Below are positions 10,054 to 64,000 of a DNA stretch of 64,000 nt, in pieces; positions within the stretch are counted from its first letter, which is position 1, and every line of letters starts with the position of its first letter. The notes under the pieces were generated by a model. It was not told the DNA's origin. It saw only the letters and a list, made by a program, of their open reading frames with translations, and did not search any database. A program made the translations under genes and the position numbers. The DNA comes from Octopus sinensis (lineage: Eukaryota), in NCBI RefSeq assembly GCF_006345805.1, contig NC_043002.1, positions 82,336,001-82,400,000 on the forward strand. The letters are read 5' to 3'.

Positions 10054-11372
10054 TCATCATCATTCATCATTGTTCGACCGTGGTCGAGACAATGGAATTT
10101 ACTATGTTACGCCAGACTTCACGGTCCATCATAGCATTACGGAGGTCCTGTTGCTGGATGCCTGTATCCCTGGAGATTACATCAGGGTAGGAGAGTGTGC
10201 GCCCTCTGGTATTGCGAGTAGATGGCTTCCAGAGGAGAAGAGTAGAAATTACTTCTTTTTCAGCTCTACAACAATGTCCAGCAAACTGGACTCTTCTACC
10301 TTTCACAAGAGATGACACAGGTGGTAGTTTCCCATATATTTGCATTTTGGTTGGATGGCGCTTCCACGAGAGGTTTTGAGCTCTCATAAGGAGGCGAGTG
10401 TAGGTTCCATCCAACCGCCTCTCAAGCTTCTTTGATAACGTCCAGGTTTCTGAGCCATATATTAGAATTGGTTCGACTGTGGCTTTGAATATTTCAAGTT
10501 TGAAGTCTCTACTTAGATTTGATGACCAGATCTTATGCATGTCATTACAGGCTGACCAGGCCATACCCTTTCTAGTTAGAAAGTCTTTTCCAGATGATGA
10601 TATGTATGACCCAAGATATTTATAATCAGAAACCATATTTAAAGGCGCACTGTTGAGAGTATGGATGATGCAATCACTGTTGGACAGGCACTTGTTTATG
10701 TATTCAGTTTTGGCCTCATTGAGGTAAAGACCTACACAATTTGAGGCTTGTTCAAGAGATTGTAAAAGAGACTGGGCATTGGAGAGAGAATCACTGATAA
10801 GAGCGATGTCGTCAGCAAAGTCAGTGTCTGTCAAGTATTCAGCTGAGTGTCTGGAACTTCTTCTTGGTTTTATTTCAAAGCCTTTGCCAGAGATGGTATC
10901 AACTGACATACGTAGCACATAATCAACAACAATGATGAAAAGAAATGGGGCGAGTGTGTCTCCCTGCAGTATTCCGGCTTTGATTGAGAAAGATGATGTT
11001 TCTCCATCAGGGGTTAAGATGGTTGAAGACGTATCTGTGTAGAGGACCTTGATGGCAGAAATAATTTTGTTTGGTATCCCATAGAGCTTAAGGATTTCAA
11101 ACATCTTGTACCTATCTACAGAATCGAACGCTTTAGAAAAGTCTACAAATACCATTGCAAGATCGCGATTAAATGCTTTTGATTCTTCAATAAGTCTGCG
11201 CAGGCATAGTATCTGGCTCAGCGTTGAGCGCCCATGTCTGAATCCATTTTGGTTCTTTCGGAGCAAAGGTTCAACAAAAAGGACAAGACGATTTAGGATC
11301 AGTTTGTTGTACAGTTTTGCAGCAATTGACATTAGAGATATACCCCTGTAGTTGGTAACGAGGGATAAATCG
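10054..11372 (-). mobile_element. 5'-truncated RTE-clade LINE with intact RT ORF (10067-11332, 421 aa)
   Basis: NYRGISL, QNGFR, FVDFSKAFDSV, GILQGDTLAP, FADD, YKYLGS, YGSETW; (ATG)n tail; TSD CCAAGGGCA at 10045-10053 and 11373-11381. Confidence 0.95.
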
Positions 11373-14561: not shown

Positions 14562-14665
14562 AACTGTTGTGTGTGTCCGTAGACTGTGAAGGTGCTTGGT
14601 TGAACTCTGACAGAAAAAGCACAAAATAATTTCTTTTCATTTTGTCGACACAGGAAAATATCAAC

Positions 14666-16573
14666 ATGACTATCGAAGCCTCTTTGGAAGGACAAACGGA
14701 AGACCAGCCTAAACAAGATACTATAGTTTGTATGACCGACACTGGTGCGACAACTGAGACTGATTTGGATGATTCCAAAACTAAATTTATTGCTAATGGC
14801 GCTAACGATGATGGCGCTGTTAATGTCATGATAAAATCCCCAGATGAATTTGGCGGCTTGTCGAAAGAAGAACTTATGAAATTTGCCAATGATCCGTTTT
14901 GGATTCGTGCTCGTCTTATTCTTTTTATTATATTCTGGATTGGATGGGTTTTGATGCTCGTTGTCGCCATTGTAATTATTGTTCTTGCTCCGCGCTGTCC
15001 ATATCGTCCCGACCTGAAATGGTATCAGAAAGATTTAATATATGAAATATCTCCTCGCTCCTTCAGTGATTCTAATCACGATGGTGTTGGTGATCTGAAA
15101 GGAATTCAAGAGAAAGCTGGCTATTTGGAATCCATCCATGTTAAAACATTGTGGCTGCACAATATCTTTCAGTCTAAATACAACGATTCTGGCTATGGAT
15201 TACTTAATCACACCGTTATTAACCCCATGTATGGAACTGAAGCAGAATTACTTTCAACAATCAAGAGTTTCAGGAAGACTGGCCGTCATTTAATCCTTGA
15301 TTTTATCATACTCAACACACACACAGATCATGCATGGTTTGTTCAAAGCCGTCAGAAGAAAGGAAAAATGAGCGATTATTACATTTGGGCTGATAAAAAC
15401 TTGGTGAACAATTTACCAACATCGGAGAAAAATGTCTGGCACTTGGATTCCAAACGGGATCAATATTACTTAGCAGTAACCGACAAAGACTTGCCCAATT
15501 TGAATATACAAAACGAAGAAGTAAGAAAAGAACTGAAATATTACCTACGCTTTTGGTTGGATCGCGGTGTTGGCGGCTTTCACATCAATGATTTAGAAAC
15601 TACTTTTAAAGAGATTTCCTCTAACGGATCTTCGGTATTCGAACGTCAGCAGGTAATAGAGTTGTTAAAAGAGCTGAGAGTGATCGCAGATGAATTTTCA
15701 GATAAACCGGGACGAGAGAGACTTTTGTTTGGTACAATGCCCGTCAATAGTAACGAAACGGCTGAATTCTACGGTGATGAGACTGAAAAGGCCCTTCATT
15801 TTATTGGTGTAACTAATCTTGCTACATCTGACAGCCCTGCTTCGATTCAAGATGCTATACGTTCTACGAGCCAATATCTCCAAAGCCATTGGAATGGTTG
15901 GATTTTGAGTAGCAACAAATTGTCTCGTCCCATGAGCCGTTTACATTCCTTCGATTACTTAAAATCACTCTTAACTCTTCAGATGCTCTTGCCTGGGACG
16001 GCTTTCTGCCACTACGGAGACGAAATTGGCATGCGGGATGCAGTTTTGCAGAATATAACTGATGGATTAAAAGACGACCAACCGAATAACAACTACATAG
16101 AATATTACAAATATCGTGCCCCTATGTCATGGTCCTCGACTAACGTAGAGTTCAGTGATGCTACGCCATGGTTAATATCAGTAAATAACAACAGTGTAGC
16201 AGGGCAAACAGCCTACAACAACAGAGACTTATATCCTCCTCTGAAGGCCTTCACTGATCTAAATCTTCTACGAAGCAATTTCTCGTTCCAGTGGGGGAAA
16301 TTTGTGCCGAGTTTCACAAATAAGAATATTATCAGCTTCCTTCGTATGGCGAAGGGTTTCCCAAGTTTCTTGGTGGTCGTTAATCTCGGCTCACACAAGC
16401 ATACAATTCATTTCAGTAGTTTTATTGAAGATGTCTCCTTGGATAAGGCCAAAGTTGTGTACCACAGCTTGCCTGAGCAGCCTAAATTCAAAGTCGGGGT
16501 GACTGTCAACCTTAATACAGCACCAGTTAGCTTACATAAGCATGAAGCTATTGTATTCAAGTTTGCGACATAA
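14666..16573 (+). CDS. SLC3A1/SLC3A2-like: SLC3 amino-acid-transporter heavy chain (4F2hc/CD98hc/rBAT-like), uninterrupted 635-aa CDS
   Basis: LSKEELMKFANDPFWIRARL + single TM + PRCP disulfide Cys, then GH13-like ectodomain (PRSFSDSNHDGVGDLKGI, YGDEIGM) lacking the catalytic residues. First ATG is 14666 (A at -3). AATAAA at 16846-16851. Confidence 0.93.
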   Translation: MTIEASLEGQTEDQPKQDTIVCMTDTGATTETDLDDSKTKFIANGANDDGAVNVMIKSPDEFGGLSKEELMKFANDPFWIRARLILFIIFWIGWVLMLVVAIVIIVLAPRCPYRPDLKWYQKDLIYEISPRSFSDSNHDGVGDLKGIQEKAGYLESIHVKTLWLHNIFQSKYNDSGYGLLNHTVINPMYGTEAELLSTIKSFRKTGRHLILDFIILNTHTDHAWFVQSRQKKGKMSDYYIWADKNLVNNLPTSEKNVWHLDSKRDQYYLAVTDKDLPNLNIQNEEVRKELKYYLRFWLDRGVGGFHINDLETTFKEISSNGSSVFERQQVIELLKELRVIADEFSDKPGRERLLFGTMPVNSNETAEFYGDETEKALHFIGVTNLATSDSPASIQDAIRSTSQYLQSHWNGWILSSNKLSRPMSRLHSFDYLKSLLTLQMLLPGTAFCHYGDEIGMRDAVLQNITDGLKDDQPNNNYIEYYKYRAPMSWSSTNVEFSDATPWLISVNNNSVAGQTAYNNRDLYPPLKAFTDLNLLRSNFSFQWGKFVPSFTNKNIISFLRMAKGFPSFLVVVNLGSHKHTIHFSSFIEDVSLDKAKVVYHSLPEQPKFKVGVTVNLNTAPVSLHKHEAIVFKFAT

Positions 16574-36024: not shown

Positions 36025-36550
36025 CTGTTTAAATACTCAACAAATGCAGCAGTTATTCTATGCAGGAGTCCCTAATTTGCATACAGAAAATGTTTAACAC
36101 TTTATAAACTGTATATATACGAACAAATGCAGCAGTTATTCTATGAAGGAGTCCCTAATTTTCATACCGAAAATTTTTAATACTCTATAAACAGTATATA
36201 TACTCAACTTATGCAGCAGTTGTTCTATGAAGGAATCCCTAATTTTCATACCGAAAATTTTTAACCCCTCTATAAACTGTTTAAATACTCAACAAATGCA
36301 GAAGTTATTCTATGAAGGAGTCCCTAATTTGCATACCGAAAATTTTTAACCGCTCTATAAACTGTTTAAATACTCAACAAATACAGCAGTTATTCTATGA
36401 AGTAGTCCCTAATTTGCATACCAAAAATGTTTAATACTTTATAAACTGTTTAAATACACAATAAATGCAGCAGTTATTCTATGCAGGAGTCCCTAATTTG
36501 CATACCGAAAATGTTTAGCACTCTATAAACTGTATATATACCCAACAAAT
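36025..36550. repeat. 83-85-bp tandem repeat, about 6 units
   Basis: TGCAGCAGTTATTCTATG..GGAGTCCCTAATT anchors at 36045, 36128, 36212, 36297, 36382, 36466. Confidence 0.92.
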
Positions 36551-37715
36551 CAACCCATCCAATCATCCATTCATCCACCCATCTAAATTCAAACACAAAT
36601 AATTTCTAACAGGCATTTTGTTTTAAACTAATAATTGTCTATCCATCCATCCATCCATCCACTGATCCACCCATTCACCCATCCATCCACCCATCTACCA
36701 ATCAACCAATCCATCCATATACCCATTTACACATCCACCCATCCATTCATCTAAATTCAAATACACAAATAATTTCCAACAGGCATTTTGTTTTAAACTA
36801 ATAATTATCCATCCATCCATCGATCCATCCATCAGTCCATGAAACCATCCACCCATCCATCCCTCCACTCATCCACTCATCCATCCAAATTCAAGCACAC
36901 AAATAATTTCTAACAGGCATTTGGTTTTAAACTAATAATTATCCATCCATCCACACATCCACCCATCCATCAAACTAAATTCAAACACACAAATAATCTG
37001 TTTTAAACTATTAATTATCCATCCAACCATTCATCCATCCACCTATCCATCCATCCATCCACCAATCCACTCATCCTTCTATCTAAATTCAAACACAAAT
37101 AATTTCTAACAGGCATTTTGTTTTAAACTAATAATTATCCATCCATCCATCCATGCACCCATGCAACCATCCAACCATCCATACATTTATCCATCCATCC
37201 ATCCATCTAAATTCAAGCACACAAATAATTTCTAACAGGCATTTGGTTTTAAACTAATAATTATCCATCAATCCATCCGTACCATACCACCAATACCATC
37301 CATCCATACCACTTATCTATACATTCCATCCCTCCATCAATCCATCTATACAATCCCATACCATTCATACATCTAAATTCAAACAAATAATTTCTAACAA
37401 GCATTTTGTTTTAAACTAATAATTATCCATCCATCTATACCATACCATCATCCATCCATACCACCCAACCATACTATCCATCCATAGCATCCATTCATAC
37501 CATCCACCCATACCTTATCATCCAATCAATACCATCCACACCATCCATCCATCTAAATTCAAACGCACAAATAATTTCTAACAGGCATTGTTTTAAACTA
37601 ATAATTATCCATCAATCCATCCATACCAAACATACTATCCTTCAATACCATACCATCCAATCATCCATACCACCCATCCATCAATCCTTACCATACCATA
37701 CTATCCATACCATAC
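36551..37715. repeat. Compound array: conserved unit of about 58 bp alternating with variable (CCAT)n/(CCATA)n tracts
   Basis: ATCTAAATTCAAACACAAATAATTTCTAACAGGCATTTTGTTTTAAACTAATAATTATC at about 36581, 36749, 36883, 36974, 37081, 37205, 37371, 37551. Confidence 0.9.
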
Positions 37716-39412: not shown

Positions 39413-41089
39413 TCAAGGATGTGTTTCCTCTCCTGTATGGATGAGTTTGTGTTTAGTTAAAGTATCATTCAGAGCAAATGATCTATCACAGATATCACAG
39501 TGATATGGTTTCTCACCTGTATGAATACGTGTGTGTGTAGCTAAGTTACATTTTTGAGTGAATGACTTTCCACAGATATCGCAGTGATATGGTTTCTCAC
39601 CTGTATGCAAACGTATGTGAGTAGTTAAGTGACCTTTTTGAGTGAATGACTCTCCACAGATATCGCAGTGATTTTGTTTCTCACCTGTATGCAAACGTTT
39701 GTGAATAGTTAAGCTACCTTTTTGAATGAATGATTTACCACAGATATCGCAGTGATATTGTTTCTCACCTGTATGCAAACGTTTGTGAATAGTTAAGCTA
39801 CTTTTTTGAGTAAATGATTTACCACAGATATCGCAGTGATATTGTTTCTCACCTGTATGCAAACGTTTGTGAATAGTTAAGCTACCTTTTTGAGTGAATG
39901 ACTTTCCACAGATATCGCAGTGATATTGTTTCTCACCTGTATGCAAACGTTTGTGAATAGTTAAGCTACCTTTTTGAGTGAATGACTTTCCACAGATATT
40001 GCAGTGATATGGTTTCTCACCTGTGTGAATGCGTTTGTGTGTAGTTAAGTCATTACTTCCAGAGAATGATTTACCACAGATATCGCAATGATAGCGTTTC
40101 TCTCCTGTATGAATGCGTTTATGATGAATTAAATCATTCATCTGAGAGTATGTTTTACCTAAAATATCACATTGATATGCTTTCTTACCTGTATGCATAC
40201 GTTTGTGAGTAGCTAGGTTACTTTTTTGAGAAAATGACTTACCACAGATATCACAGCGATATGGTTCATCACCTGTATGAATGCATTTGTGAATAGTTAA
40301 TACTACATTTCGAGCAAACGATTTACCACAGATATCACATTGATGTGGTTTCTCACCTGTATGCAGACGCTTGTGAATAGTTAAGTTACATTTTTGAGAG
40401 AATGATTTACCACAAATATCACAGTGATATGGCTTCTCTCCAGTGTGAATGTGTTTGTGTGTAGTTAAAGTATTAATTCTAGAGAATGATATACCACAAA
40501 TATTACAGCGATATGGTTTCTCACCTGTATGAATGCGTTTGTGTGTGGTTAATACTATGTTTTGAGCAAATGATTTACCACAGATATCACAGTGATGTGT
40601 TTTCTCACCTGTATGCAGACGTTTGTGAATAGTTAAGCTACTTTTTTGAGTTAATGACTTTCCACAGATATTACAGTGATATGGTTTTTCTCCTGTGTGA
40701 GTGCGTTTGTGTTTAGTTAAAGTACCATTCATAGCGAAAGATTTACCACAGATATCACAGTGATATGGTTTCTCACCTGTATGCATACGTGTGTGTGTAG
40801 TTAAGCTACATTTTTGAGAGAATGAATTACCACAGATATCACAGCGATATGGTTTCTCACCTGTGTGACTGCGTTTATGTGTAGTTAAGTTACTAAATGC
40901 AGGGAATGTTTTACCACAAATATCACAGTGATATGGTTTCTCTCCTGTGTGACTGCGTTTATGAGTAGTTAGGTTCCCTCTCCTAGAGAAAGACTTTTTG
41001 CAGATATCACAACAGTACGATAATTTTTCTCTTTTTATCGACATCCCTTCACAAAATAAGCCATCCTTTACATTTCTCACATAACTCAT
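39413..41089 (-). CDS. Poly-C2H2 zinc-finger protein, 558 aa, 19 fingers (finger 11 has Cys>Leu)
   Basis: Uninterrupted CxxC-x12-HxxxH repeats with TGEKP linkers; no recognisable effector domain. Confidence 0.92.
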
Positions 41090-47068: not shown

Positions 47069-48235
47069 TCATGGTGACGTTTTCTCTCCTGTATGAATGA
47101 GTTTGTGTTTAGATAAAGTATCATTAAGAGGAAATGATTTACCACAGATATCACAGCGATATGGTTTCTCACCTGTATGAATGCGTTTGTGAGTAGTTAA
47201 GTGACCATTTTGTGTGAATGATTTACCACAGATATTACAGAGATATGGTTTCTCACCTGTATGGATGCGTTTGTGTGTGGTTAATACATCATTTAGAGCA
47301 AACGATTTACCACAGATATCACAGTGATATGGTTTTTTACCTGTATGCAGACGTTTGTGAGTAGTTAAGTGACCTTTTTGAGTGAATGATTTACCACAGA
47401 TATCACAGCGATATGGCTTCTCTCCTGTGTGAATACGTTTGTGTATAGTTAAGCCATCACTTCCAGAAAATGATTTACCACACATGTCGCAATGATAGGG
47501 TTTCTCTCCTATATGGAGACGTTTATGATGAATTAAATTATTCATCTGAGAGAATGTTTTACCACAAATATCACAGTGATATGGTTTTTCGCCTGTGTGA
47601 ATGCGTTTATGAGCTGTCAAGGTACTATTTATAGCAAATGACTTACCACAGATATTACAGTGGTATGGTTTCTTACCTGTATGAGTGCGTTTGTGATTAG
47701 TTAATACATCGTTTACTGCAAATGATTTACCACAGATATCACAGTGATATGGTTTCATACCTGTATGAATACGTGTATGAGTAGTTAAGTTACCTTTTTG
47801 AGAGAATAACTTACCACAGATATCACAGTGATAAGGTTTCTCACCTGTGTGAATGCGTTTGTGTATAGTTAAGTTACTAAACGCAGGGAATGTTTTACCA
47901 CAAATATCACAGTGATATTGTTTTTCTTCTGTGTGACTGCATTTATGAGTTTTTAAGGTACTATTTGTTGAAAATGACTTCCCACAATCATCACAGTGAT
48001 ATGGTTTCTCTCCTGTGTGAAAGTATTTATGTTTAGTCAAGAGGTTATTTTGAGAGAATGATTTACCACAGATATCACAGTGATATGGCTTCTCTCCTGT
48101 AGAAATGCATTTATGAGTAGTTAGGTAACCTCTCTGAGAGAAAGACTTTTTGCAGATATCACAATGGTATGATAATTTTTCTCTTTTTCTCGTCGTTTCT
48201 TCAGGAAATAAGCCATCCTTTCTAACATAACTCAT
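47069..48235 (-). CDS. Poly-C2H2 zinc-finger protein, 388 aa, 13 fingers (finger 1 lacks the last His)
   Basis: Same architecture and N-terminus (MSYVR..DGLF...REKLSY) as 39413-41089. Confidence 0.92.
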   Translation of the reverse strand: MSYVRKDGLFPEETTRKREKLSYHCDICKKSFSQRGYLTTHKCISTGEKPYHCDICGKSFSQNNLLTKHKYFHTGEKPYHCDDCGKSFSTNSTLKTHKCSHTEEKQYHCDICGKTFPAFSNLTIHKRIHTGEKPYHCDICGKLFSQKGNLTTHTRIHTGMKPYHCDICGKSFAVNDVLTNHKRTHTGKKPYHCNICGKSFAINSTLTAHKRIHTGEKPYHCDICGKTFSQMNNLIHHKRLHIGEKPYHCDMCGKSFSGSDGLTIHKRIHTGEKPYRCDICGKSFTQKGHLTTHKRLHTGKKPYHCDICGKSFALNDVLTTHKRIHTGEKPYLCNICGKSFTQNGHLTTHKRIHTGEKPYRCDICGKSFPLNDTLSKHKLIHTGEKTSP

Positions 48236-53900: not shown

Positions 53901-54042
53901 TATTCAAATATTCAACGTAAACACGAAGTTTCTACCTTTAAACACAAGGAGTTACAACATCTTTACTTGTGAGATTTTTGCTGCCCTGGTAACTATTTAT
54001 TTATTTTTCCGTGTTAATTGTTAACAAGGTAAAAATACACTC

Positions 54043-54049
<7 letters not shown>

Positions 54050-54086
<37 letters not shown>

Positions 54087-54293
54087 ATATATATATATAT
54101 GTGTATATATATATATATATGTTATATATATATATAGTGTATATATATATATATGTGTATATATATATATATGTGTATATATATATAATGTGTATATATA
54201 TATATATTGTATATATATATATTGTGTATATATATATATATGGTGTATATATATATATATGTGTTATATATATATATGTGTATATATATATAT

Positions 54294-54345
<52 letters not shown>

Positions 54346-54459
54346 TATATATGTATATATATGTATATATATTATATATGTATATATATATATATGTATA
54401 TATATAATATGTATATATATAATATATATATATATATTATATATATATATATATATATG

Positions 54460-54509
<50 letters not shown>

Positions 54510-54533
54510 ATATATATATATATATATAATATA

Positions 54534-54584
<51 letters not shown>

Positions 54585-54664
54585 TATATATATATATTAT
54601 ATATGTATATATGTATATATATGTATTATATATATATATATATATATATGTGTATATATATATG

Positions 54665-54695
<31 letters not shown>

Positions 54696-54741
54696 GTATA
54701 TATATATGTATATATATATGTATATATTATATATATATAGG

Positions 54742-54788
<47 letters not shown>

Positions 54789-55194
54789 GTATATATATAT
54801 ATGTGTATATAATATATGTATATATATATGTATATATATATGTGTATATATATATGTGTATATATATATATGTGGTATATATATATGTGTATATATATAT
54901 ATGTATATATATATGTATAATATATATGTGTATATATATATGTGTATATATATATGTGTGTATATATATGTGTGTATATATATGTGTGTATATATATATG
55001 TGTTATATATATATGTGTGTATATATATATGTGTGTATATATATATGTGTGTTATATATATATGTGTGTTATATATATGTGTATGTAATATATGTGTATG
55101 TATATATATGTGTATGTATATATATGTGTATGTATATATATATGTATGTATATATATATATGTGTATATATATATATGTGTATATATATATATG

Positions 55195-55226
<32 letters not shown>

Positions 55227-55375
55227 ATGTATATATATATATATATGTATATTATATATATGTATATATATATATATGTAATATATATATATGTATATAT
55301 ATATATGTATATTATATATATATATGTATATATATATATATGTATATATATATATGTAAGTATATATGTATGTAT
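54050..55375. repeat. 1.3-kb degenerate (TA)n/(TG) microsatellite
   Basis: Directly visible; source of the spurious YI/CV-repeat ORFs. Confidence 0.98.
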
Positions 55376-55935
55376 GTGTGTCTTCCCAACATCGCATGAC
55401 AACCGATGTTGGTGTGTTTACGTCCCCGTAACTTAGCGGTTCTGCAAAAGAGACTGATAGAATAAGTACTAGGCTTACAAAGAATAAGTCCTGGGGGTCG
55501 ATTTGCTCGACTAAAGGCGGTGCTCCAGCATTTTGAAATGTCGATTTTTGCCAATTTCTTTTTTCAGATTCGGAATCTCTGTAGCCGAGAAACGGGGTTT
55601 CTGTAAAAACAAATAATAAAAGAAAGGAAGGGTTGGTGGGGTAAAAATTAAGTCTTTTCACTCTTTGCACGCCACGTATCTGCCTGACAAGCTGTTAATT
55701 TCTTTGCATCCCTACAACTTAGGGGTTCGTTAACAGTATAGCGTAAAAGTAGCAATTGAATTGAAAATAAACAGTCTAGGCATATTTTTGTATCTTTTGT
55801 TATTTCTATCTTTTTCTTGCAATTCATTTTCCCAAAATATAATTACCGAAATGAAAACATTAAGAACTGGCCATTTTAGCTTTAGCATCCGATAAAATAT
55901 TAATAATACGAGGTACACAGCATCTTCCGAGTGTC

Positions 55936-57790
55936 AGTTCATTTCGTTAACTTTCCGCGTCGGTTTTTCGAAGTGTTTTCAAATCATATTTCATCTTCAG
56001 GTACTTAAAGATATTTCACATTTAACACTAATTTATTTATCATTATATATATATATATATATACTTATATAGATAGATAACAGGTAAGATAGAATACATA
56101 ATTTATTTTTAGTAAAAGCCGATGAACCTGGCTAATTGGAAACTTCAGACAAAAGCGAAAGTTTCAAGTGTTACAAGTCTGAATCGATATTAATTCTATT
56201 CTCCGATAAAATTGGCATATCCGTGAAAAAACACCAAATTTCTAATTTTTTTTATTCCAGTAGATATTTCATTTGTTGATTGTGTCCATTCAAAGCCGTC
56301 TGTTGTTTTATTTTAGAGGTATCATTTATTAAACATCTGTATTTGCTGTTTATTCTGTCAAAATAATTCTCTTTTATTTAGCTCCTCTTTTACTCTTTTA
56401 CTTGTTTCAGTTATTTGACTGTGGTCATGCTGGAGCACCGCCTTTAGTCGAGCAAATCGACTCCAGGACTTATTCTTTGTAAGCCTAGTACTTATACTAT
56501 CGGTCTCTTTTGCCGAACCGCTAAGTTACGGGGACGTAAACACACCAGCATCGGTTGTCAAGCGATGTTGGGGGACAAACACAGACACACACATATACAT
56601 ATACATATATATACACGACGGGTCTCTTTCAGTTTCCACTCACAAGGAATTCCGAACTAACACTCGGGAGATGCTGTGTACCTCGTATTATTACTATTTT
56701 ATCGGATGCTAAAGTTAAAATGGCCAGTTCTTAATGTTTTAATTTAGTAGAAGACACTTGCCCAAGGTTCCACGCGGTGGGACTGAACCCGGAGCTACTT
56801 ACCACACAGCCACTCCTACGCCTGGGAATAAACAATTATCTGCAACATCATAAAACAAATTGCTGACTGCAACGAGTGTAGGACAAAACTCCTCAGTTAT
56901 ATTTTTCGGTTGTCTTTCGTTTTATTTTTATTTCTTACTCGTTTCAGCCGTTAAACTGCGGCCATGCTGGGGCACCGCCTTCACTGAAACAAGTAAGAAA
57001 AAAGTTCTGGAGTCGGTAAATTCGACTATAAATTCTTCAAGGCGGTGCCCCCAGCATGGTCAGAGTCTAATAACGGAAGGAAGTAAAATAGGAAAACAGA
57101 TCTGAAAAAATTTTTTTTAATTACTGGTTTTAAAGTATTAGGAGGTGGGGTTCAAAGAAGTACCAAAATGGTTTTCATTTTCATAATTAGTAAACAAAAC
57201 TTAATCTATACACCAAATTTGAAAATAATTGCAACAAAATTGTAGAGTGTCGAAAACCATGACAAAATAAATATCAAAAACGAGCTGAAGGCTGTGCATA
57301 TGTGGACATTACACAAGGTTGTATAATATAATTTTAATAACAAAATAAATTTTAAAGATTAATTATTGGGATAAAAGTTTATATCCACAGTTAATCATTA
57401 TGAAAATGAAGTTATATTTTCTATTGTTGAATCTCTGCTTTTCAAGTGTTTCCTATATCTTCTACTGTTTCTGTGTCATTTCAGAATATGAGATGTTAGT
57501 GGTAAAAAAGAATTATTACGTCAAATATATCATGAATATTGATTGTCTTTTGAAGACTAATGGAAGATGTTACAATAGACATAACCCAGTTTATATAATA
57601 GATGAATGGTGAATAACTGAAATATTTCTTCTGAATTAATAGCAACATTTATTTTCCTGGAATATTTACAAAAGTATTTCACATTCTCTTTGAACACCGA
57701 ATGTGTGTATATCATCTTCAGATATTGACAAAAATAGGAGTTGCTGTAAATATAACTGTGGAAGTATTTGAATGAACAAAGAAACAGAAA
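55936..57790 (+). other. Third ZNF-paralog 5' structure (exon 1 55936-56083, intron, 5'UTR exon from 57485) with no zinc-finger CDS in the window
   Basis: Homology to ZNF1/2 exon 1, branch/acceptor region and 5'UTR; donor CAG|GTAAGA; acceptor TCATTTCAG|AATAT. Confidence 0.7.
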
Positions 57791-57792
57791 CC

Positions 57793-58914
57793 TCAGGTTC
57801 AGTAAAAAGTAAGCAACATTTTAAACCATGAAAAATCTGTACTGGATTTTTGCAGAGTTTTGAATCTTTTTAAACATTTGTTTTCCAATTGTCTGACAAT
57901 ACAGACATAGACTTGCCCAAATGCATCAATATAATTAACATTGATATTTTTTCACTGTAGTTATAATAATCTGAAATGGAACTATCAAAGCGTGATATTC
58001 GAGCAATTTTGCTATTCAACTTCAAAAAAGGACGTAAAGCAGCTGAAAGTGCTCGCGATATCAATGAAACATTTGGTGAGGAAATGACCAGTGAGTGGTC
58101 AGCTCGAAAATGGTTTAAACGATTTCGTAGTGGTGATCTCAGCCTTGAAGATCGTGAGCGTAGTGGACGCCCGTCTGTCATCGATGATGGTCAATTAAAG
58201 ACTGTCATTGAGAAAGATCCATGTAAAACTACTCGGAAACTGGCAGAAGAACTTAAAGTTAGCCAGAAAACTGCCTGCAACCACTTGCGTGCTCTCAGAA
58301 AATCAAGAAAGCTTGACAAATGGGTAAAACACGATTTGAATGAAAATTAGTAATTGTGCAAATATGAAATTTGCTTGCCGCTTTTTCTCTGTAACCAGAC
58401 TGATCCATTTCTTGACCATATTGTAACTTGTGATGAAAAGTGGACAATAATAAAAAACGTTCTTCGCAGTGGTTGGACCAAATTGAGGCACCAAACATCT
58501 TCCCTAAACCCAAACTCTTCAAAAAGAAGGTTAAGGTGACTATTTTGTGGTGTGCAGATGGACTCATCCACTATAACTTCTTAAAACCTAGAAAAACCAT
58601 TACTACAGAAACATATTGCTATGAAATTGCCAAAATGAATGCAAAACTGTTACTTGTCCATTCCAGACTGGTCAACAGAAGAGGGCCAACCATTCTTAAT
58701 GACATTGCTTGACCACATTTCACTAATGACGATCCAGAAGTTGAGGGAACTTGGCTATGAAGTTCTTCCCCACCCAGCTTATTCCCCAGGCCTTTCTCCT
58801 ACCAGCTTCCACTTTTTCAAGCACCTTGATGGTTTCCTGCAAGAGAAGAAGTTCAAAAATCAAGAAGTAGCCAAACTTTTTTATATACAGAATAGAAAAA
58901 CCTCTATCCTGTGA
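57793..58914 (+). mobile_element. Mariner element: intact 124-aa DNA-binding ORF (57976-58350), catalytic part disrupted, 3' end missing
   Basis: TIR-like TCAGGTTCAGTAAAAAGTAAGCAACATTTT; WFKRFRSGD.SLED..RSGRP; WVKHDLNE then TAG TAA; TCDEKW; frameshifts; YSPGLSPTS lacks the third Asp. Confidence 0.92.
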
Positions 58915-59345
58915 TATATACATAGCCTCCATTATGTCTGGGAAGAAAGACGGAACGGTCACAGTTGGGACGTCTTTGATCATATCTGTCCAATCAGATC
59001 CAACTCGGGACTAAACAAAAGGTGACAAAGGGAACAAGTCAAGGCAACAAGAGAGACTTTACCTGAGTGCTAGAAAGAGTAACTGAATCTTCCTGACGAA
59101 AAGAAAAGAAATGAAATTACCGTTTTCAAGAAAAAAAAAATAATGCAAGTTTATATTATTTTATAATGTTCACTTGGGAATTCATTACTTCTAGAAAAGA
59201 ATAAGACAAAATAGTCATGGCTGGAGCGCCTTTTCTCACAGATCCATTACAATCAGAGCTATCTTGTGGTTAAAACAATATTCTTCACTGAATGATGAAG
59301 TAGCTGAAGTTAAAGAAAAGTTGAAAGAATAAAAGATCGCAAGTA

Positions 59346-59750
59346 GGCGCAGGAGTGGTTGTGTGGTAAGTAGCTTGCTTACCAACCACATGGTTCTGGG
59401 TTCAGTCCCACTGTGTGGCATCTTGGGCAAGTGTCTTCTGCTATAGCCTTGGGCCGACCAATGTCTTGTGAGTGGATTTGGTAGACGGAAACTGAAAGAA
59501 GCCTGTCATATATATATGTATATATATATGTATGTGTGTGTGTATATGTTTGTGTGTCTGTGTTTGTCCCCCTAGCATTGCTTGACAACCAATGCTGGTG
59601 TGTTTACGTCCCTGTCACTTAGCAGTTCGGCAAAAGAGACTGATAGAATAAGTACTGGGCTTACAAAGAATAAGTCCCGGGGTCGATTTGCTCGACTAAA
59701 GGTGGTGCTCCAGCATGGCTGCAGTCAAATGACTGAAACAAGTAAAAGAG
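59346..59750 (+). mobile_element. Full-length tRNA-derived SINE, family A
   Basis: Complete head, internal microsatellite and CR1-like tail. Confidence 0.85.
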
Positions 59751-61080
59751 TATCCATATTCCAAATATTGAGATTCCCTTAACTAACGTAATTTTATTCA
59801 GATTTTCGTATGAAATAAATAGAAAATGTTATGGGAACTTAGTACATATTATGGCTAATATCCAGTGTTGTACGAGAGTAGTTTCACGGATCTTGTCAAT
59901 CCCAGTCATGGATTTTTTAATTAATTTTTCTTAGCTAAACAGTTTGAAACTTTGGATACTGGTTGAATGTATCAGAGGTTTTTCTATTCAGAATATAAAG
60001 AAGTTTGGCTACTTTTTCTAGCAGATCATACAACCACATACAGGCTCCATCGTTGGTCAGTCTCAGTAATAATTTTATTGTTATTTAGCCTCAAATCAAC
60101 CCTGATACAACAAACCTATCATCAAAGACATTCCAGCCTTCAGCAAACTGTCTTTTTAGGGATAATCTAGGACGTTACGTACAATGGGCGTGTGATTTAA
60201 GTAGAGGGATACTTTGGCTGTTATTTTTAGCATGTCGAGCGACCAGGCAGAGGCTCTTTTATTGGTTCGATTGTGTGATGAGATTTGTTTTACACATATT
60301 TGTATGTATGTGTATATATCATCTGCAGAAATTAGAAATTAAGTCAAAAGCTGAGAGTTTCGTGTACTGGAACTTATCAAACACGAATTTGGCCATTATC
60401 ACTCTGTAACTTCTGCCTATTATTAATGTGTGTGTGTGTATAATAATAATAATAATGAAATTATTGTATACAGTGCTTTATTGTATACACCACAACATGT
60501 ATGTATGTATATATATATATATATGTGTGTGTGTATGTGTGTATTCAAAGAAATTCCAACTCTCTTTTTTATGTTTTATTTATATTCTTTATAATATTAA
60601 TGTAGAATATAGAATATATAATATAAATAGTATATATAGTAAAATGAAATGAAGTATTGATTGTCTTATTGAATAGATGAAATATTGAATATCAAATATT
60701 AAGGGACTAGTATACTTTCTTGCATTTAAGCAGTCTTCAAGGTCCTAGGTTGTGACAGGAATGTGTATATATATATATATATATCATCATCATCATTTAA
60801 CGTCCGCTTTCCATGCTGGCATGGGTTGGACGGTTCAACTGGGGTCTGGGGAGCCCGAAAGCTGCACCAGTCCAGTCAGATCTGGCAGTGTTTCTACAGC
60901 TGGATGCCCTTCCTAACGCCAACCACTCCGAGAGTGTAGTGGGTGATTTTATGTGCCACCGACACAGGTGCCAGGCGAGGCTGGCAAACGGCCACGCTCG
61001 GATGGTGTTTTTATGTGCCACCGACACAGGTGCCAGATGAGGCTGGCAAACGGCCACGATATATATATATACATACATGG

Positions 61081-61833
61081 ATGGAAATAGAAGTACTTAA
61101 ACTGAGAGCTAAGACGAATGAAGAAAAAGTAAAAACCATAGATGTAGAAAACAACGAAGAAGTCATCAAACTAACAGACAACATCAATACTGAAACATTA
61201 CTTACACTATGGAAAGAAGAATGTGAAAAAGAAGGACTAAAGTCCCTCCAACGATGGGAAAAGAGCGCCAACTGGTTCTTGGATTATGAAACCAACTTCA
61301 AAAATGAACTCATATCCAACAACCCCTTCATAAAATTAAGTAAAACAAAATCAAATACTAACAGAACGGAACAACCACCAAGAAATCTAAACACACTCTA
61401 CACCAGAAAAATACATTTAAAATGTACCCCACACTACCTACACCAACCCCAAAACACTTACAGGGGCCCACCACACCATTTAGAGAACCAAAGGGCTACA
61501 ACATACAATTCTATGAAAAACAATCCACATAACCAAACTAAGACTCCACCACCAAACATCTACCCTAGGAACCAACTATACAAACCTAACAAACAACAAA
61601 TACACTACAGAAGAAACAACTACCAACACAATATACCTGATAAACTAAGACGGAACACGAGGTACAAAAACACACTACAAAACAGAGCACCACAAACTCA
61701 CTCTGAAAATGATAACAACAGGAGACAGATAAACAGTATTTTTGAACATAACTACACCAACCATTTTTTAGACCTAACACACAGGAACAGGGATACACGA
61801 TGGCAACGGACAAACAAAAGAAACCACAGGTAA
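61081..61833 (+). CDS. Upstream ORF of the PLE (Asn/Gln/Thr-rich, unknown function)
   Basis: MEIEVLKLRAK...WKEECEKEGLKSLQRWEK; same strong A/C bias as the RT ORF; overlaps it by 34 nt. Confidence 0.5.
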   Translation: MEIEVLKLRAKTNEEKVKTIDVENNEEVIKLTDNINTETLLTLWKEECEKEGLKSLQRWEKSANWFLDYETNFKNELISNNPFIKLSKTKSNTNRTEQPPRNLNTLYTRKIHLKCTPHYLHQPQNTYRGPPHHLENQRATTYNSMKNNPHNQTKTPPPNIYPRNQLYKPNKQQIHYRRNNYQHNIPDKLRRNTRYKNTLQNRAPQTHSENDNNRRQINSIFEHNYTNHFLDLTHRNRDTRWQRTNKRNHR

Positions 61834-64000
61834 TTAAAATAATCAATCTCTCAAATAAAGAACTTACACCTAACGAAATAAGCATACTTTCCAAAGGACT
61901 TAAATTTACACCAACCCCACAACGTTCTAATTACTATGAAATGAAAGATGATATTTCTGAATTTTGTAGGAAACTAAGACTTGCTGAGGAATTTCATGGC
62001 AAACAAATAGATGAATCAATAGCTAGAAACAACAGCAATTACACCCCTACCAAGGGAAAGAATAAAGCCTTAGACTGCTATTGTGACTACATAACTAATT
62101 TCCCTTTTCAATTCACCAAGAAACAAAAACATAGCCAAAACTTTAACAAAAGAGAATGGAATGACCTCATCAAACTAAGAGAAGACAAAACAATAACAAT
62201 TAAGGAGGCAGATAAGGGCAACGCGGTAGTATTAATGACTACAAACGATTATAAAAATTTAGTGCTATCCCTATTAAAAGATGAAACGTATTATGAAAGG
62301 GCCCAACAGTATAATCAGCCAAAAATAATGTATAACCTCAGGACATTAATCAACACATACCGAGAAGGACTCACGGACAAGGAGTACGAATACATCACTA
62401 ACTTTAAGTGCAAATCAAGTTTGTTCTACGGTATCCCTAAAGTCCACAAAAGCCAAATAATTAGTGAAACATGCAAAACATCTACCGATATACTCATCAA
62501 AATCCCTTCACCAAATGATCTTAAATTTAGACCGATAATAGCAGGCCCAGCATGTGAAACTCACCGCCTCAGCAATTTCTTAGACACACTTCTTAAACCT
62601 TTCCTAAAGCACATCAAAAGCTACGTAAGAGATGATATAGACATGCTTAACCACCTCCCCAAAACAGTCAATGAGAAAACCCTTCTAGTATCCTTCGACG
62701 TAATTAACCTTTATTCAAACATCCCTCACACCCTAGGAATAGAAGCGATCACTTTCTGGCTAAATAACTACTCCTTTGAACTCCCAACTCGCATAAATAA
62801 AGAACTTATAATAGAAGGACTTACATTTATTTTAGAAAACAATTACTTTATTTTTGACAATAATTTCTACAGACAAAGATCGGGAACAGCGATGGGCACG
62901 CGTACTGCGCCTTTTTTTGCCAACCTAGTGATGGGATACCTCGAGAAAATACTCTACCAGAAAACACTCGAGAAATATGGAAACACCTTCTCCACCTATA
63001 TCCAGAACAACTGGAAAAGCTACCTCGACGACTGCTTTATCCTCTGGGATAAAAGTATAGAGAAACTTGAGGAATTTAAAATACTATTAAATGGAATAAA
63101 TGATAATATTCAGTTCACGATGGATCATAACGAAGAAGAATTGCCATTTTTAGACATCCTCATTAAGAAAGCCGGCAACAAAATAGAGACAGATATCTAT
63201 TATAAATCGACAAACTCCAAGCAGTACCTACCCTTTGATTCATGCCACCCAAGACACACTAGAATAAATGTCCCTTTTTGTTTAGCTAGAAGGATTTGCA
63301 CCATAATATCAGACACAAACACCCAACACACACGTCTCCAGGAACTTAGAACTACACTCACAAATAGAAATTATCCACAGCCCCTAATAGACAGTGCAAT
63401 CCAACGGGCACTTAAATTAAGTATAGAAGACCTGAGACAAACAAAACCAAAAAAGAAAGAAAAATTAAAAACCCTTCCCTATATCTCTACACACAACCCA
63501 CTTAACAATGCGGCCTTCAGCACCATACTACAAAGCACAGCCCTACTAAAGGGAGACCCAAAGATGAACCGGATCCTCGAAACACACACCATCATTAAAA
63601 GTAAACGGCAACCAAAATCCTTGAAAAGGATTTTAACCCAAGCTAAACTGCACTCAACATCAACCACAAAACCAGCAGTTAGAAAATGTGGAAAGCCCAA
63701 CTGCGGAATCTGTGTCATCTTGGTAGAAGGTTCAGAATTTATACTAAAGCAAGGCCATCAGTTCACCATTAGAACAAACTTCACCTGTGCATCAGAAAAC
63801 TTAATTTACATCTTAACATGCGCAGGTTGCAATAGGCAGTATATAGGCCATACAAAAAATAGCTTACGTAAAAGGATGGCGGTGCATAAATCCCAAATTA
63901 GAAACCCTGAATACCGGAAAATACCAGTCAGCGGACACATAGATAGATGTGCTTCAAATGAAAATCCGAAATTTACAACTTGCCCACTTTACAAATTCAG
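61800..64000 (+). mobile_element. Penelope-like element (Neptune-like) RT + GIY-YIG ORF, open to the window end (>733 codons)
   Basis: Manual translation, no stop found: IINLS..KGLKFTPTP, KEADKG, FYGIPKVHK, FRPII, SFDVINLYSNIP, QRSGTAMG, YLDD, LPFLD, CGKPNCGIC, LIYILTC..C..QYIG. Confidence 0.93.

What the first reader, a model, noticed from the sequence alone, without database searches (positions are those of the whole stretch)
55936..58350. Third ZNF paralog whose promoter and leader now lead into a mariner DNA-binding domain
Seen: + strand homologs of ZNF exon 1 (TCAGTTCATTTCG...CCGCGTCGGTTTTT; TTAAAGATATTTCACATT; CAG|GTAAGA), of the intron end (TTTATATCCACAGTTAATCATTATGAAAA; TCATTTCAG|AATAT) and of the 5'UTR (exact GTATTTCACATTCT; TGTGGAAGTAT). 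The homology stops within about 10-20 nt of the expected ZNF ATG, where a mariner TIR begins (57793). No fingers follow in the remaining 6 kb. The mariner supplies a donor (GTAAGC, 57809) and an acceptor (TTTTTTCACTGTAG, 57960) before its ATG. Its first 124 codons, through the WVPHEL-equivalent linker, are clean; after that come two stops, at least two frameshifts and loss of the third catalytic Asp. Known: SETMAR arose by capturing a mariner via an upstream acceptor and conserved the DNA-binding part. Inference: possible early domestication, with a ZNF promoter expressing a TIR-binding, catalytically dead repressor; otherwise a ZNF gene killed by insertion.
Basis: partly seen in the sequence, partly recalled or inferred. 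Interest (0 to 1): 0.8.

Follow-up and report, generated by a model that had tools for sequence, protein, structure and literature searches.

The report
Octopus ZNF gene stump feeding a mariner fragment
The front end of a zinc-finger gene in an octopus genome runs straight into a broken mariner transposon, and the first ~82 codons of that transposon's DNA-binding part have changed almost only at silent sites, so this piece may have been kept as a working protein rather than left to decay.

Summary
The window is Octopus DNA, about 99.5% identical to O. vulgaris OX597819.1. A + strand homolog of the exon 1, intron end and 5'UTR exon of two neighbouring C2H2-ZNF genes ends within a few bases of the expected ZNF ATG. 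At that point (57793) the 5' inverted repeat of a cecropia/Hsmar1-type mariner begins.

The mariner has an intact 124-codon ORF for the paired HTH domain. After that come three stops, two frameshifts and loss of the third catalytic Asp. The last ~230 bp, including the 3' repeat, are missing. No zinc fingers follow for ~10 kb.

The catalytic part looks neutral (13 synonymous: 30 nonsynonymous: 1 stop). The 124-codon ORF is silent-biased (13:11), and the bias lies entirely in codons 1-82 (8-9 synonymous: 1 nonsynonymous). The other seven copies pooled give 49:143 there. The bias starts at the ATG.

So domestication has real but indirect support, for HTH1 plus linker only. Transcription, the proposed splicing and ZNF-promoter use are untested. 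Rivals are a mosaic of a young and an old copy, or chance. No orthologue from a more distant octopus could be fetched.

The parts
55894..56083 (+). Homolog of ZNF exon 1 and proximal promoter; donor CAG|GT at 56083|56084; contains a (TA)n expansion
   Evidence: Three-way alignment with sequence upstream of ZNF1 and ZNF2; blastn 67.5%/160 nt vs ZNF1
56084..57484 (+). Intron homolog, filled with SINE copies (56385-56640, 56745-56825, 56925-56981). Its last ~200 nt (57282-57484) are conserved with the ZNF1/ZNF2 introns. Acceptor AG at 57483-57484
   Evidence: blastn; alignment A2
57485..57792 (+). Homolog of the ZNF 5'UTR part of exon 2; homology fades between 57768 and 57792, a few nt from where the ZNF ATG should be
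   Evidence: 72.6%/427 nt vs ZNF2, E 7e-62; alignment A2
57793..57817 (+). Mariner 5' terminal inverted repeat (TCAGGTTCAGTAAAAAGTAAGCAAC); preceded by CC rather than a TA target-site duplication
   Evidence: Same terminus at ends of L002, L003, L004, L008 copies; unique in the window
57818..57975 (+).
57976..58350 (+). Intact 124-codon ORF encoding the paired HTH DNA-binding domain of a mariner transposase; ends at a private CAG>TAG stop
   Evidence: the ORF listing; HTH_48 2e-19; SETMAR DBD 7S03 E 1.7e-33 and Mos1 3HOS E 6e-26; annotated as a protein in the O. vulgaris assembly
57976..58221 (+). Codons 1-82 (HTH1, linker, first helix of HTH2): the segment with the purifying-selection signature, 8-9 synonymous vs 1 nonsynonymous private change
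58222..58347 (+). Codons 83-124 (rest of HTH2 and WVPHEL-type linker): neutral-looking, 5 synonymous vs 10 nonsynonymous private changes, including P118K, H105R, I107L and G108R
58351..58866 (+). Decayed catalytic domain: stops at 58351 and 58710, 7-nt deletion after 58444, 2-nt deletion after 58717, third Asp replaced by Ser at 58804-58806; truncated about 38 codons before the natural end, with no 3' TIR
58862..60017 (.). Segment bounded by a 44-nt inverted repeat (58862-58905 / 59974-60017, 90.9%) that starts exactly where mariner homology stops; encloses a SINE (59344-59752). It marks the rearrangement or insertion that truncated the mariner

Best explanation
The locus is the stump of a third, inverted C2H2-ZNF paralog. 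It keeps the promoter-proximal exon 1, the intron and the 5'UTR part of exon 2. A cecropia/Hsmar1-type mariner transposed into the leader at or next to the ZNF start codon. A later deletion or rearrangement removed the mariner's last ~230 bp together with the ZNF coding exon. These steps are shown by the sequence.

The remaining mariner is dead as a transposase. Its first 124 codons still form an ORF for the paired helix-turn-helix DNA-binding domain. The first ~82 codons have been held by purifying selection for about as long as the other copies of the family have been decaying.

The most likely reading (inferred) is that this segment is, or was until very recently, translated as a small HTH protein or as a coding exon. 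The adjacent ZNF-derived promoter and leader are the obvious source of transcription. This would be a lineage-specific co-option of a transposase DNA-binding module.

The function is not established. HTH2 is drifting and the mariner family looks extinct in octopus. A host role for HTH1 plus linker (DNA or protein binding) therefore fits better than a dedicated TIR-binding repressor of mariner.
For: Structure. ZNF-leader homology runs up to 57768-57792, and an exact mariner terminus sits at 57793. The ORF is intact with HTH_48 and HTH_32 matches, and the rest is broken.

Selection. Each copy was compared with a consensus built from the other copies. That consensus reads as an open DD34D transposase.
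- In the 124-codon ORF the window copy has 13 synonymous : 11 nonsynonymous : 0 stop changes.
- In its catalytic part it has 13:30:1.
- The other seven copies have a synonymous fraction of 0.17-0.30, apart from two C-terminal samples of only 20 codons.
- In codons 1-82 the window copy has 8-9 synonymous: 1 nonsynonymous. The seven others have 16-24 nonsynonymous each, pooled 49:143.
- Synonymous counts are alike (8-9 vs 3-13), so the window copy is as old as the others.

Controls.
- With the same three-copy consensus used for the catalytic part, codons 1-82 give 12:2 against 13:31, Fisher P=3e-4.
- In a sliding 80-codon scan the window copy reaches P=1e-4. The best value in any other copy is 0.014.
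- All differing sites are backed by 4-7 of the 7 other copies.
- Only 3 of the 9 silent changes in codons 1-82 are CpG transitions (my reading).
- The bias begins at the ATG. The 100 nt just upstream carry 10 private changes with no codon pattern, which also rules out the overlapping antisense ORF.
- At the catalytic part's nonsynonymous rate, 12-17 such changes are expected in codons 1-82. One is seen (P<=5e-5).

Other support. The start context is good (A at -3, G at +4). The 124-aa product is an annotated protein of the O. vulgaris assembly. The ORF is identical at protein level in a second genome that differs by 0.44%, and the one difference is synonymous.
Against: - Counts are small: 10 changes in the key segment. 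The split at codon 82 was chosen after seeing the data. The pre-specified N-terminal versus C-terminal comparison is only P=0.04.
- The catalytic-part consensus rests on 3-4 copies.
- HTH2 and the conserved WVPHEL linker are not constrained, which is odd for a DNA-binding module.
- The 5' TIR is still present.
- There is no transcript evidence. The O. vulgaris annotation pipeline also used ab initio and protein-homology evidence (PMC10700109), and similar short 'SETMAR-like' models are called on plainly decayed copies in O. sinensis and O. bimaculoides.
- A read-through leader would carry 11 upstream ATGs.
- No orthologue from a more distant species could be examined. No orthologous model turned up among O. 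sinensis RefSeq proteins.
Confidence: 0.5

Rival explanations
1. Neutral wreck of mosaic origin. The 5' part (TIR, UTR, codons 1-~82) would come from a recent insertion out of a mariner lineage that stayed active long after the main burst. Its differences from the consensus would then be silent-biased. The 3' part would come from an old decayed copy. Recombination between the two direct copies fused them and deleted everything in between, including the ZNF coding exon.
For: - It explains three things at once: the abrupt change of pattern near codon 82, the lower total divergence of codons 1-82 (branch 0.049 against 0.08-0.12 elsewhere), and the missing ZNF exon.
- UTR divergence of about 8-10% is compatible, because UTRs also drift in active lineages.
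Against: - It requires a lineage active until no more than about 1% divergence ago. Yet no close relative was found. The best N-terminal hit is 75% identical (70% over the longest match), and the best full-length hits are 57-60% identical and from other animals. O. sinensis and O. bimaculoides RefSeq proteins were in the database searched.
- None of the seven sampled copies shares more than two of the window copy's private silent changes, and no sharing forms a pattern.
- A young insertion should still show its TA duplication. The flank is CC.
Confidence: 0.2
2. Ordinary dead ZNF stump plus dead mariner. The intact ORF and the silent-site excess are chance, helped by after-the-fact choice of copy and segment.
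For: - Openness alone is weak evidence. The chance that all 5 disabling lesions fall in the catalytic part is 0.07, and P(no lesion in 372 nt) is 0.03.
- At least seven other decayed copies also keep N-terminal ORFs of 93-179 aa.
- Codons 83-124 and the rest of the copy are neutral.
Against: - 9 of 10 changes at third codon positions has P=3.6e-4.
- The deficit of nonsynonymous changes against the copy's own catalytic part has P<=5e-5.
- The empirical null from seven other copies never goes below P=0.014.
- Conditioning on an open frame removes stops, not missense changes.
Confidence: 0.2
3. The ZNF gene is not dead. Its coding exon lies more than 10 kb downstream, and the mariner with other repeats sits in what has become a long intron or UTR.
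For: Only about 10 kb downstream could be read. The downstream DNA is dense with repeats: SINE, an inverted-repeat segment and retroelement RT ORFs.
Against: In ZNF1 and ZNF2 the leader and the ATG with its fingers lie in one exon. Here that exon is interrupted a few nt from the ATG, and the mariner's 3' end is missing. Nested insertion alone cannot explain that.
Confidence: 0.07

Closest known systems
SETMAR (primate SET gene plus captured Hsmar1 transposase; PMC6326780, PMC9062482, PDB 7S03)
   Same: - Same mariner subfamily. The 124-aa ORF aligns to the SETMAR DNA-binding domain over 109 residues (E 1.7e-33). The full conceptual protein is 55-58% identical to SETMAR and Hsmar1-type proteins.
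- In both, a host gene's transcription unit runs into a mariner whose DNA-binding part stays open while catalysis is lost.
   Different: - In SETMAR the transposon landed downstream of host coding exons and is fused in frame to a SET domain. Both HTH motifs and the whole transposase ORF are conserved, and orthologues exist across anthropoids.
- Here only host non-coding sequence (promoter and leader) lies upstream, and no host protein domain is attached.
- Only HTH1 plus linker looks constrained, and the catalytic half is broken and truncated.
- Conservation across species is unknown.
DNA-binding-module co-option of Tc1/mariner transposases in Drosophila (CG4570, cag, the recent obscura-group gene; PMC13548663)
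   Same: The HTH module is retained without the DDE domain. Purifying selection is mild or partial, as in a recent lineage-restricted case. The question of telling such genes from decaying pseudogenes is the same.
   Different: Those genes pass multi-criteria tests: microsynteny across species, loss of TIRs and TSDs, and expression. Here synteny beyond a 99.5%-identical genome and expression are untested, and the 5' TIR is retained.
KP-type truncated-transposase repressors (P element KP; from my own knowledge)
   Same: A product made of the N-terminal DNA-binding part of a transposase with the catalytic part lost. It could in principle compete for transposon ends or poison multimers.
   Different: - KP is a mobile, multi-copy, internally deleted element with both ends intact, and it is selected while the family is active.
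- This is a single immobile copy lacking a 3' end.
- All sampled members of its family are decayed by 10-16% or more, so there is little left to repress.
Annotated 'SETMAR-like' short proteins on decayed mariner copies in O. sinensis and O. bimaculoides (P0123, P0124, P0128)
   Same: Same mariner family (66-68% amino-acid identity). N-terminal HTH ORFs of 116-148 aa are called as genes. P0128 even splices an upstream exon into the HTH region.
   Different: Those copies show neutral substitution patterns (synonymous fraction 0.17-0.26 in the N-terminal part) and in-frame deletions or altered starts. The window copy does not.

Membership tests
mariner transposon copy (cecropia/Hsmar1-like, DD34D) | N-terminal paired HTH (HTH_48) followed by a Transposase_1 / DDE domain | tested here: met
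   HTH_48 2e-19 and Transposase_1 1.4e-19 on the conceptual translation; 57-60% identity to full-length mariner transposases
mariner transposon copy (cecropia/Hsmar1-like, DD34D) | Terminal inverted repeats at both ends, flanked by a TA duplication | tested here: not met
   The 5' TIR is present at 57793-57817. The 3' TIR is absent from the window and from L001. The 5' flank is CC, not TA. This is therefore a truncated remnant, not a complete element
mariner transposon copy (cecropia/Hsmar1-like, DD34D) | Intact D,D(34)D catalytic triad and open transposase frame | tested here: not met
   Third Asp replaced by Ser (58804-58806), three stops, two frameshifts. The family consensus restores the HDNARPH and SPTD motifs and an open frame
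mariner transposon copy (cecropia/Hsmar1-like, DD34D) | Multiple dispersed paralogous copies in the genome | tested here: met
   Seven other copies from O. sinensis, O. bimaculoides and Logan contigs, 74-80% identical
Domesticated transposase-derived gene (criteria as in PMC13548663; SETMAR as model) | Open reading frame kept under purifying selection | tested here: inconclusive
   Met for codons 1-82: 8-9 synonymous vs 1 nonsynonymous, against 49:143 in the other copies. Not met for codons 83-124 (5:10). The test uses a paralog consensus, not orthologues
Domesticated transposase-derived gene (criteria as in PMC13548663; SETMAR as model) | Single orthologous copy conserved in synteny across species | not testable with these tools
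   The only comparator is O. vulgaris OX597819.1 at 0.44% divergence, which has the same structure and one synonymous difference in the ORF. The attempt to reach the O. bimaculoides orthologue via ZNF2 failed
Domesticated transposase-derived gene (criteria as in PMC13548663; SETMAR as model) | Loss of TIRs and TSDs (immobilisation) | tested here: inconclusive
   The 3' TIR and any TA flank are gone, so the copy cannot move. The 5' TIR is still recognisable
Domesticated transposase-derived gene (criteria as in PMC13548663; SETMAR as model) | Transcription and translation from a host promoter | not testable with these tools
   No expression data. The only evidence is an annotated 124-aa model in the O. 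vulgaris assembly. The pipeline that produced it also accepts ab initio and protein-homology evidence
C2H2 zinc-finger gene of the local cluster | Exon 1 / intron / leader architecture shared with ZNF1 and ZNF2 | tested here: met
   Alignments A1 and A2 with splice motifs conserved
C2H2 zinc-finger gene of the local cluster | Coding exon with tandem C2H2 fingers after the leader | tested here: not met
   No tblastn or C-x2-C...H-x3-H match on either strand from 57.8 kb to about 68.3 kb
KP-like truncated-transposase repressor | Encoded by a mobile, internally deleted, multi-copy element while the family is active | tested here: not met
   Single copy without a 3' end. No copy more than 75% identical at protein level was found. 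All sampled copies are decayed

The most novel reading that the evidence does not exclude
A lineage-specific octopus mini-gene. The orphaned promoter and leader of a dead C2H2-ZNF paralog would drive a small protein of roughly 82-124 aa, made only of the first HTH and linker of a mariner transposase, kept under purifying selection long after the mariner family itself died. This would be a promoter-capture route to domestication, the mirror image of SETMAR: host regulatory DNA plus a transposon DNA-binding domain, with no host protein domain. The constraint ends near codon 82, so the selected unit might instead be an exon that splices onward, for example at CAT|GTAAAA near 58222.
Probability: 0.3. 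Interest if true: 0.65.

Novelty: new member of a known kind. Interest (0 to 1): 0.5.

Why it matters
Octopus genomes are known for a very large C2H2-ZNF expansion and a heavy transposon load. Documented cases of transposase domestication in cephalopods are scarce.

If confirmed, this locus would catch a co-option at an early stage. The transposon end is still visible, the catalytic half is rotting, and only one HTH is under constraint. Transcription would be supplied by the regulatory remains of a dead ZNF gene, not by fusion to a host coding exon.

The case also has a practical lesson. An open N-terminal ORF alone says little, because at least seven neutral copies have one. A silent-versus-replacement count against paralogous copies separates this copy from the rest.

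If the signal turns out to be a mosaic or chance, the locus is an ordinary gene wreck.

Tried and rejected
- **3' TIR and mariner tail.** I searched for a 3' TIR with up to 3 mismatches, and with the 3' tails of three other copies, in the window and in L001. Neither was found. tblastn with full-length mariner proteins found no downstream remnant of the last ~38 codons.
- **Exact-product look-ups of ZNF2 and ZNF1.** The aim was to get annotated gene ranges and so confirm exon 1. Neither product is on record.
- **Last protein search, on ZNF2.** The aim was to find the O. bimaculoides orthologue and reach the orthologous mariner site through its flank. The result was swamped by vertebrate zinc-finger proteins, and no octopus protein was listed.
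- **Antisense ORF 57870-58181.** Its third codon positions coincide with those of the sense ORF, so it could in principle explain the bias. Rejected: its UTR-overlapping part has 1 synonymous: 9 nonsynonymous changes.
- **CpG hypermutability.** Rejected: only 3 of the 9 silent changes in codons 1-82 (4 of 13 in the whole ORF) are CpG transitions. The other copies, with the same sites, show no bias.
- **Consensus noise.** Small comparator sets add about 4 spurious nonsynonymous changes per 77 codons. The contrast survives when the same three copies are used for both parts.
- **Retrieval bias.** The comparators were found by protein similarity to the query. This cannot hide the window copy's private changes, so I discounted it (inference).
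- **A false lead.** An apparent tandem pair of copies in L002 was an artefact of several loci sharing one file.
- **SRA run identifiers of the Logan contigs.** They were not found in the paper library.
Full report
**Source and setting.** The window is octopus DNA. The 124-aa ORF in the finding is carried by Octopus vulgaris chromosome OX597819.1 (GCA_951406725.2, locus L001). The window matches L001 at 98.4-99.2% by megablast. In the 5.5 kb around the finding there are 24 substitutions, or 0.44%. The window therefore comes from another haplotype, individual or very close sister species.

Two intact C2H2 zinc-finger ORFs lie on the - strand: ZNF1 at 39413-41089 and ZNF2 at 47069-48235. Their upstream regions are 80-92% identical to each other in two blocks. 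One is an exon-1/promoter block. The other is the intron end plus the leader and ATG.

**Check of the observation.** The + strand segment 57282-57686 matches the ZNF2 intron end and leader at 72.6% over 427 nt (E 7e-62). It matches ZNF1 at 70.6% over 333 nt. Segment 55894-56039 matches the exon-1 block more weakly.

These include the donor CAG|GT at 56083|56084 and the acceptor TTTCAG|A at 57484|57485. The last clear leader motif, TGTGGAAGTAT, sits at 57758-57768. In ZNF1 and ZNF2 the ATG follows that motif by 18 nt. Here 24 nt (57769-57792) follow, and then the mariner terminus TCAGGTTCAG... begins at 57793.

That this is the true element end is shown by other copies of the same family. Their ends read TA|(T/C)CAGG... 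and ...CCTGA|TA. In the window the flanking dinucleotide is CC, not TA.

No C2H2 finger is found downstream, in the window or in the extra 4.6 kb of L001.

**The mariner copy.**
- The ORF 57976-58350 matches Pfam HTH_48 (2e-19) and HTH_32.
- A conceptual read-through matches Transposase_1 (1.4e-19).
- It is 55-60% identical to Hsmar1/SETMAR-type transposases.
- The ORF aligns to the SETMAR DNA-binding domain structure 7S03 (E 1.7e-33) and to Mos1.
- After codon 124 come TAG and TAA (58348-58353), a 7-nt deletion after 58444, TGA at 58710, and a 2-nt deletion after 58717.
- The SPD motif reads SPG, and the third catalytic Asp is Ser.

Homology to other copies stops at 58863-58885. The last ~38 codons, the 3'UTR and the 3' TIR are absent from the window and from L001. 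Exactly there a 44-nt inverted repeat begins (58862-58905 / 59974-60017). It encloses a SINE.

So the ZNF gene was not simply killed by an insertion. A second event removed the mariner's 3' end and the ZNF coding exon.

**Is the intact N-terminal ORF more than chance?** Openness alone is weak evidence. With five disabling lesions in the 519 nt after the ORF, the chance that all fall there is 0.07. The chance of none in 372 nt is 0.03.

Other decayed copies also keep N-terminal ORFs of 93-179 aa. Some are annotated as 'SETMAR-like' proteins in O. sinensis and O. bimaculoides. The 124-aa product is itself an annotated O. vulgaris protein. But that annotation combined transcripts, protein alignments and ab initio calls (PMC10700109), so it does not prove expression.

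I fetched seven other copies of the family: L002 and L003 from O. sinensis, L004 from O. bimaculoides, and L005-L008 from Logan contigs. I aligned them with the window copy.

Their consensus is an open DD34D transposase. I compared each copy with the consensus of the others.

| Copy and region | Synonymous | Nonsynonymous | Stops |
|---|---|---|---|
| Window copy, 124-codon ORF | 13 | 11 | 0 |
| Window copy, catalytic part | 13 | 30 | 1 |
| Window copy, codons 1-82 | 8-9 | 1 (T25S) | 0 |
| Window copy, codons 83-124 | 5 | 10 | 0 |
| Seven other copies pooled, codons 1-82 | 49 | 143 (incl. stops) | (included) |

The other copies have a synonymous fraction of 0.17-0.30, the neutral expectation, apart from two C-terminal samples of only 20 codons. 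The excess in the window copy lies wholly in codons 1-82. In that stretch each of the other copies has 16-24 nonsynonymous changes. The number of silent changes is similar to the window copy's (3-13). The window copy is therefore not young. It has simply not accepted amino-acid changes there.

**Controls.**
- Using the same three comparator copies for both parts gives 12:2 against 13:31 (Fisher P=3e-4).
- In a sliding 80-codon scan the window copy's N-terminus reaches P=1e-4. The best window in any other copy reaches 0.014.
- The consensus base at every differing site is backed by 4-7 of the 7 other copies.
- Only 3 of the 9 silent changes in codons 1-82 are CpG transitions.
- The 100 nt upstream of the ATG carry 10 private changes with no periodicity. 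The constraint therefore starts at the start codon. This also rules out the overlapping antisense ORF, whose third positions coincide with the sense ones.
- Star-tree branch lengths for the window copy: UTR 0.079, codons 1-82 0.049, codons 83-124 0.117, catalytic part 0.08-0.11.

**What this supports.** The data fit purifying selection on the sense reading frame of HTH1, the linker and the first helix of HTH2, over a period comparable with the age of the family's other copies.

It does not support every detail.
- The HTH2 recognition helix and the WVPHEL-type linker carry most of the replacements (R83C, E88K, K91E, Q94K, H105R, I107L, G108R, K111R, P118K). A faithful TIR-binding module is therefore doubtful.
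- All sampled family members are 10-16% or more decayed, so a repressor of that family would have had nothing to repress for a long time.
- The proposed donor GTAAGC is part of the TIR sequence.
- The AG of the proposed acceptor is a private T>A change at 57959, which is suggestive but is one of ten UTR changes.
- A read-through transcript from exon 2 would have a 490-nt leader with 11 short upstream ORFs. ZNF1 and ZNF2 have 5 each in 300-350 nt. The start context is good.

**Rivals.**
1. *Mosaic copy.* A recent insertion from a long-lived active lineage recombined with an old copy, deleting the DNA between them. This would also explain the missing ZNF exon and the sharp boundary near codon 82. 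It predicts close siblings and probably intact transposases. None was found in databases that include the O. sinensis, O. vulgaris and O. bimaculoides protein sets. The CC flank also does not look like a fresh insertion.
2. *Chance, helped by post hoc choices.* The pre-specified N-terminal versus C-terminal contrast is only P=0.04, and counts are small.
3. *A ZNF exon farther than 10 kb downstream.* This cannot be excluded, but it does not explain the truncated mariner.

**Comparison with known cases.** The nearest model is SETMAR (PMC6326780, PMC9062482). It belongs to the same mariner subfamily and arose when a host transcription unit captured a transposase. But SETMAR fuses a host SET domain in frame and conserves the whole DNA-binding domain.

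The DNA-binding-module route described for Drosophila Tc1/mariner-derived genes, including a recent lineage-restricted case, is the closest category (PMC13548663). The criteria in that paper are synteny across species, loss of TIRs and expression. Here they are mostly untested or only half met. I therefore file this as a candidate, not a member.

**Verdict.** The locus is certainly a ZNF gene stump fused to a truncated dead mariner. With about even odds, the first ~82 codons of the mariner ORF have been kept by selection.

The decisive data are orthologous loci in other octopods, a full census of the family's copies, and transcript mapping. None of these could be obtained with the tools at hand.

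Noticed in passing
window 55849-55940 and 56654-56745: A 92-nt inverted duplication (94.6%) brackets the exon-1 homolog of the third ZNF copy and a SINE. One arm is the promoter-proximal sequence itself. It could form a long hairpin in a primary transcript or mark a local rearrangement.
   Followed up: no
window 58862-58905 and 59974-60017: A 44-nt inverted repeat (90.9%) whose left arm begins exactly where mariner homology ends. It encloses a tRNA-like SINE copy (59344-59752). It is either the ends of another small element or a footprint of the event that truncated the mariner.
   Followed up: partly
window 54000-55400 (L001 7099-7345): A very AT-rich (GC 0.19) TA/TATG-type microsatellite is about 1 kb longer in the window than in the O. 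vulgaris reference assembly. This is a large length polymorphism or an assembly difference.
   Followed up: partly
window 36025-37630: Minisatellite arrays explain the strong GC skew (-0.54) of this stretch. One has an 84/169-nt unit with about 6 copies. Several have CCAT-rich units of 126-170 nt.
   Followed up: yes
L004 3001-5385 (O. bimaculoides CM046601.1): The RefSeq model P0128 ('SETMAR-like', 143 aa) splices an unrelated upstream exon into another decayed copy of the same mariner family and leaves it at a GGTAAAG site inside HTH2. That copy shows a neutral substitution pattern. Chimeric models on mariner HTH fragments are therefore not rare in octopus annotations.
   Followed up: partly
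window ~61525-63624 (L001 13550-15366): Retroelement ORFs (374 aa with DUF8422, 229 aa with HTH_animal, reverse-transcriptase-like motifs) are open in the O. vulgaris assembly but not identical or open in the window. This may be a young element with allelic differences.
   Followed up: no
window 10067-11332 (-), 14642-16573 (+): A 421-aa reverse-transcriptase ORF (LINE-like), and a 643-aa single-exon ORF that resembles an amino-acid-transporter heavy chain or alpha-amylase-family protein. Neither was examined.
   Followed up: no
window 58326-58333: The double private change CCA>AAA (P118K) turns GGTACCA into GGTAAAA. This improves a donor-like motif at the end of the ORF and could matter if the HTH segment is used as an internal exon.
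   Followed up: no
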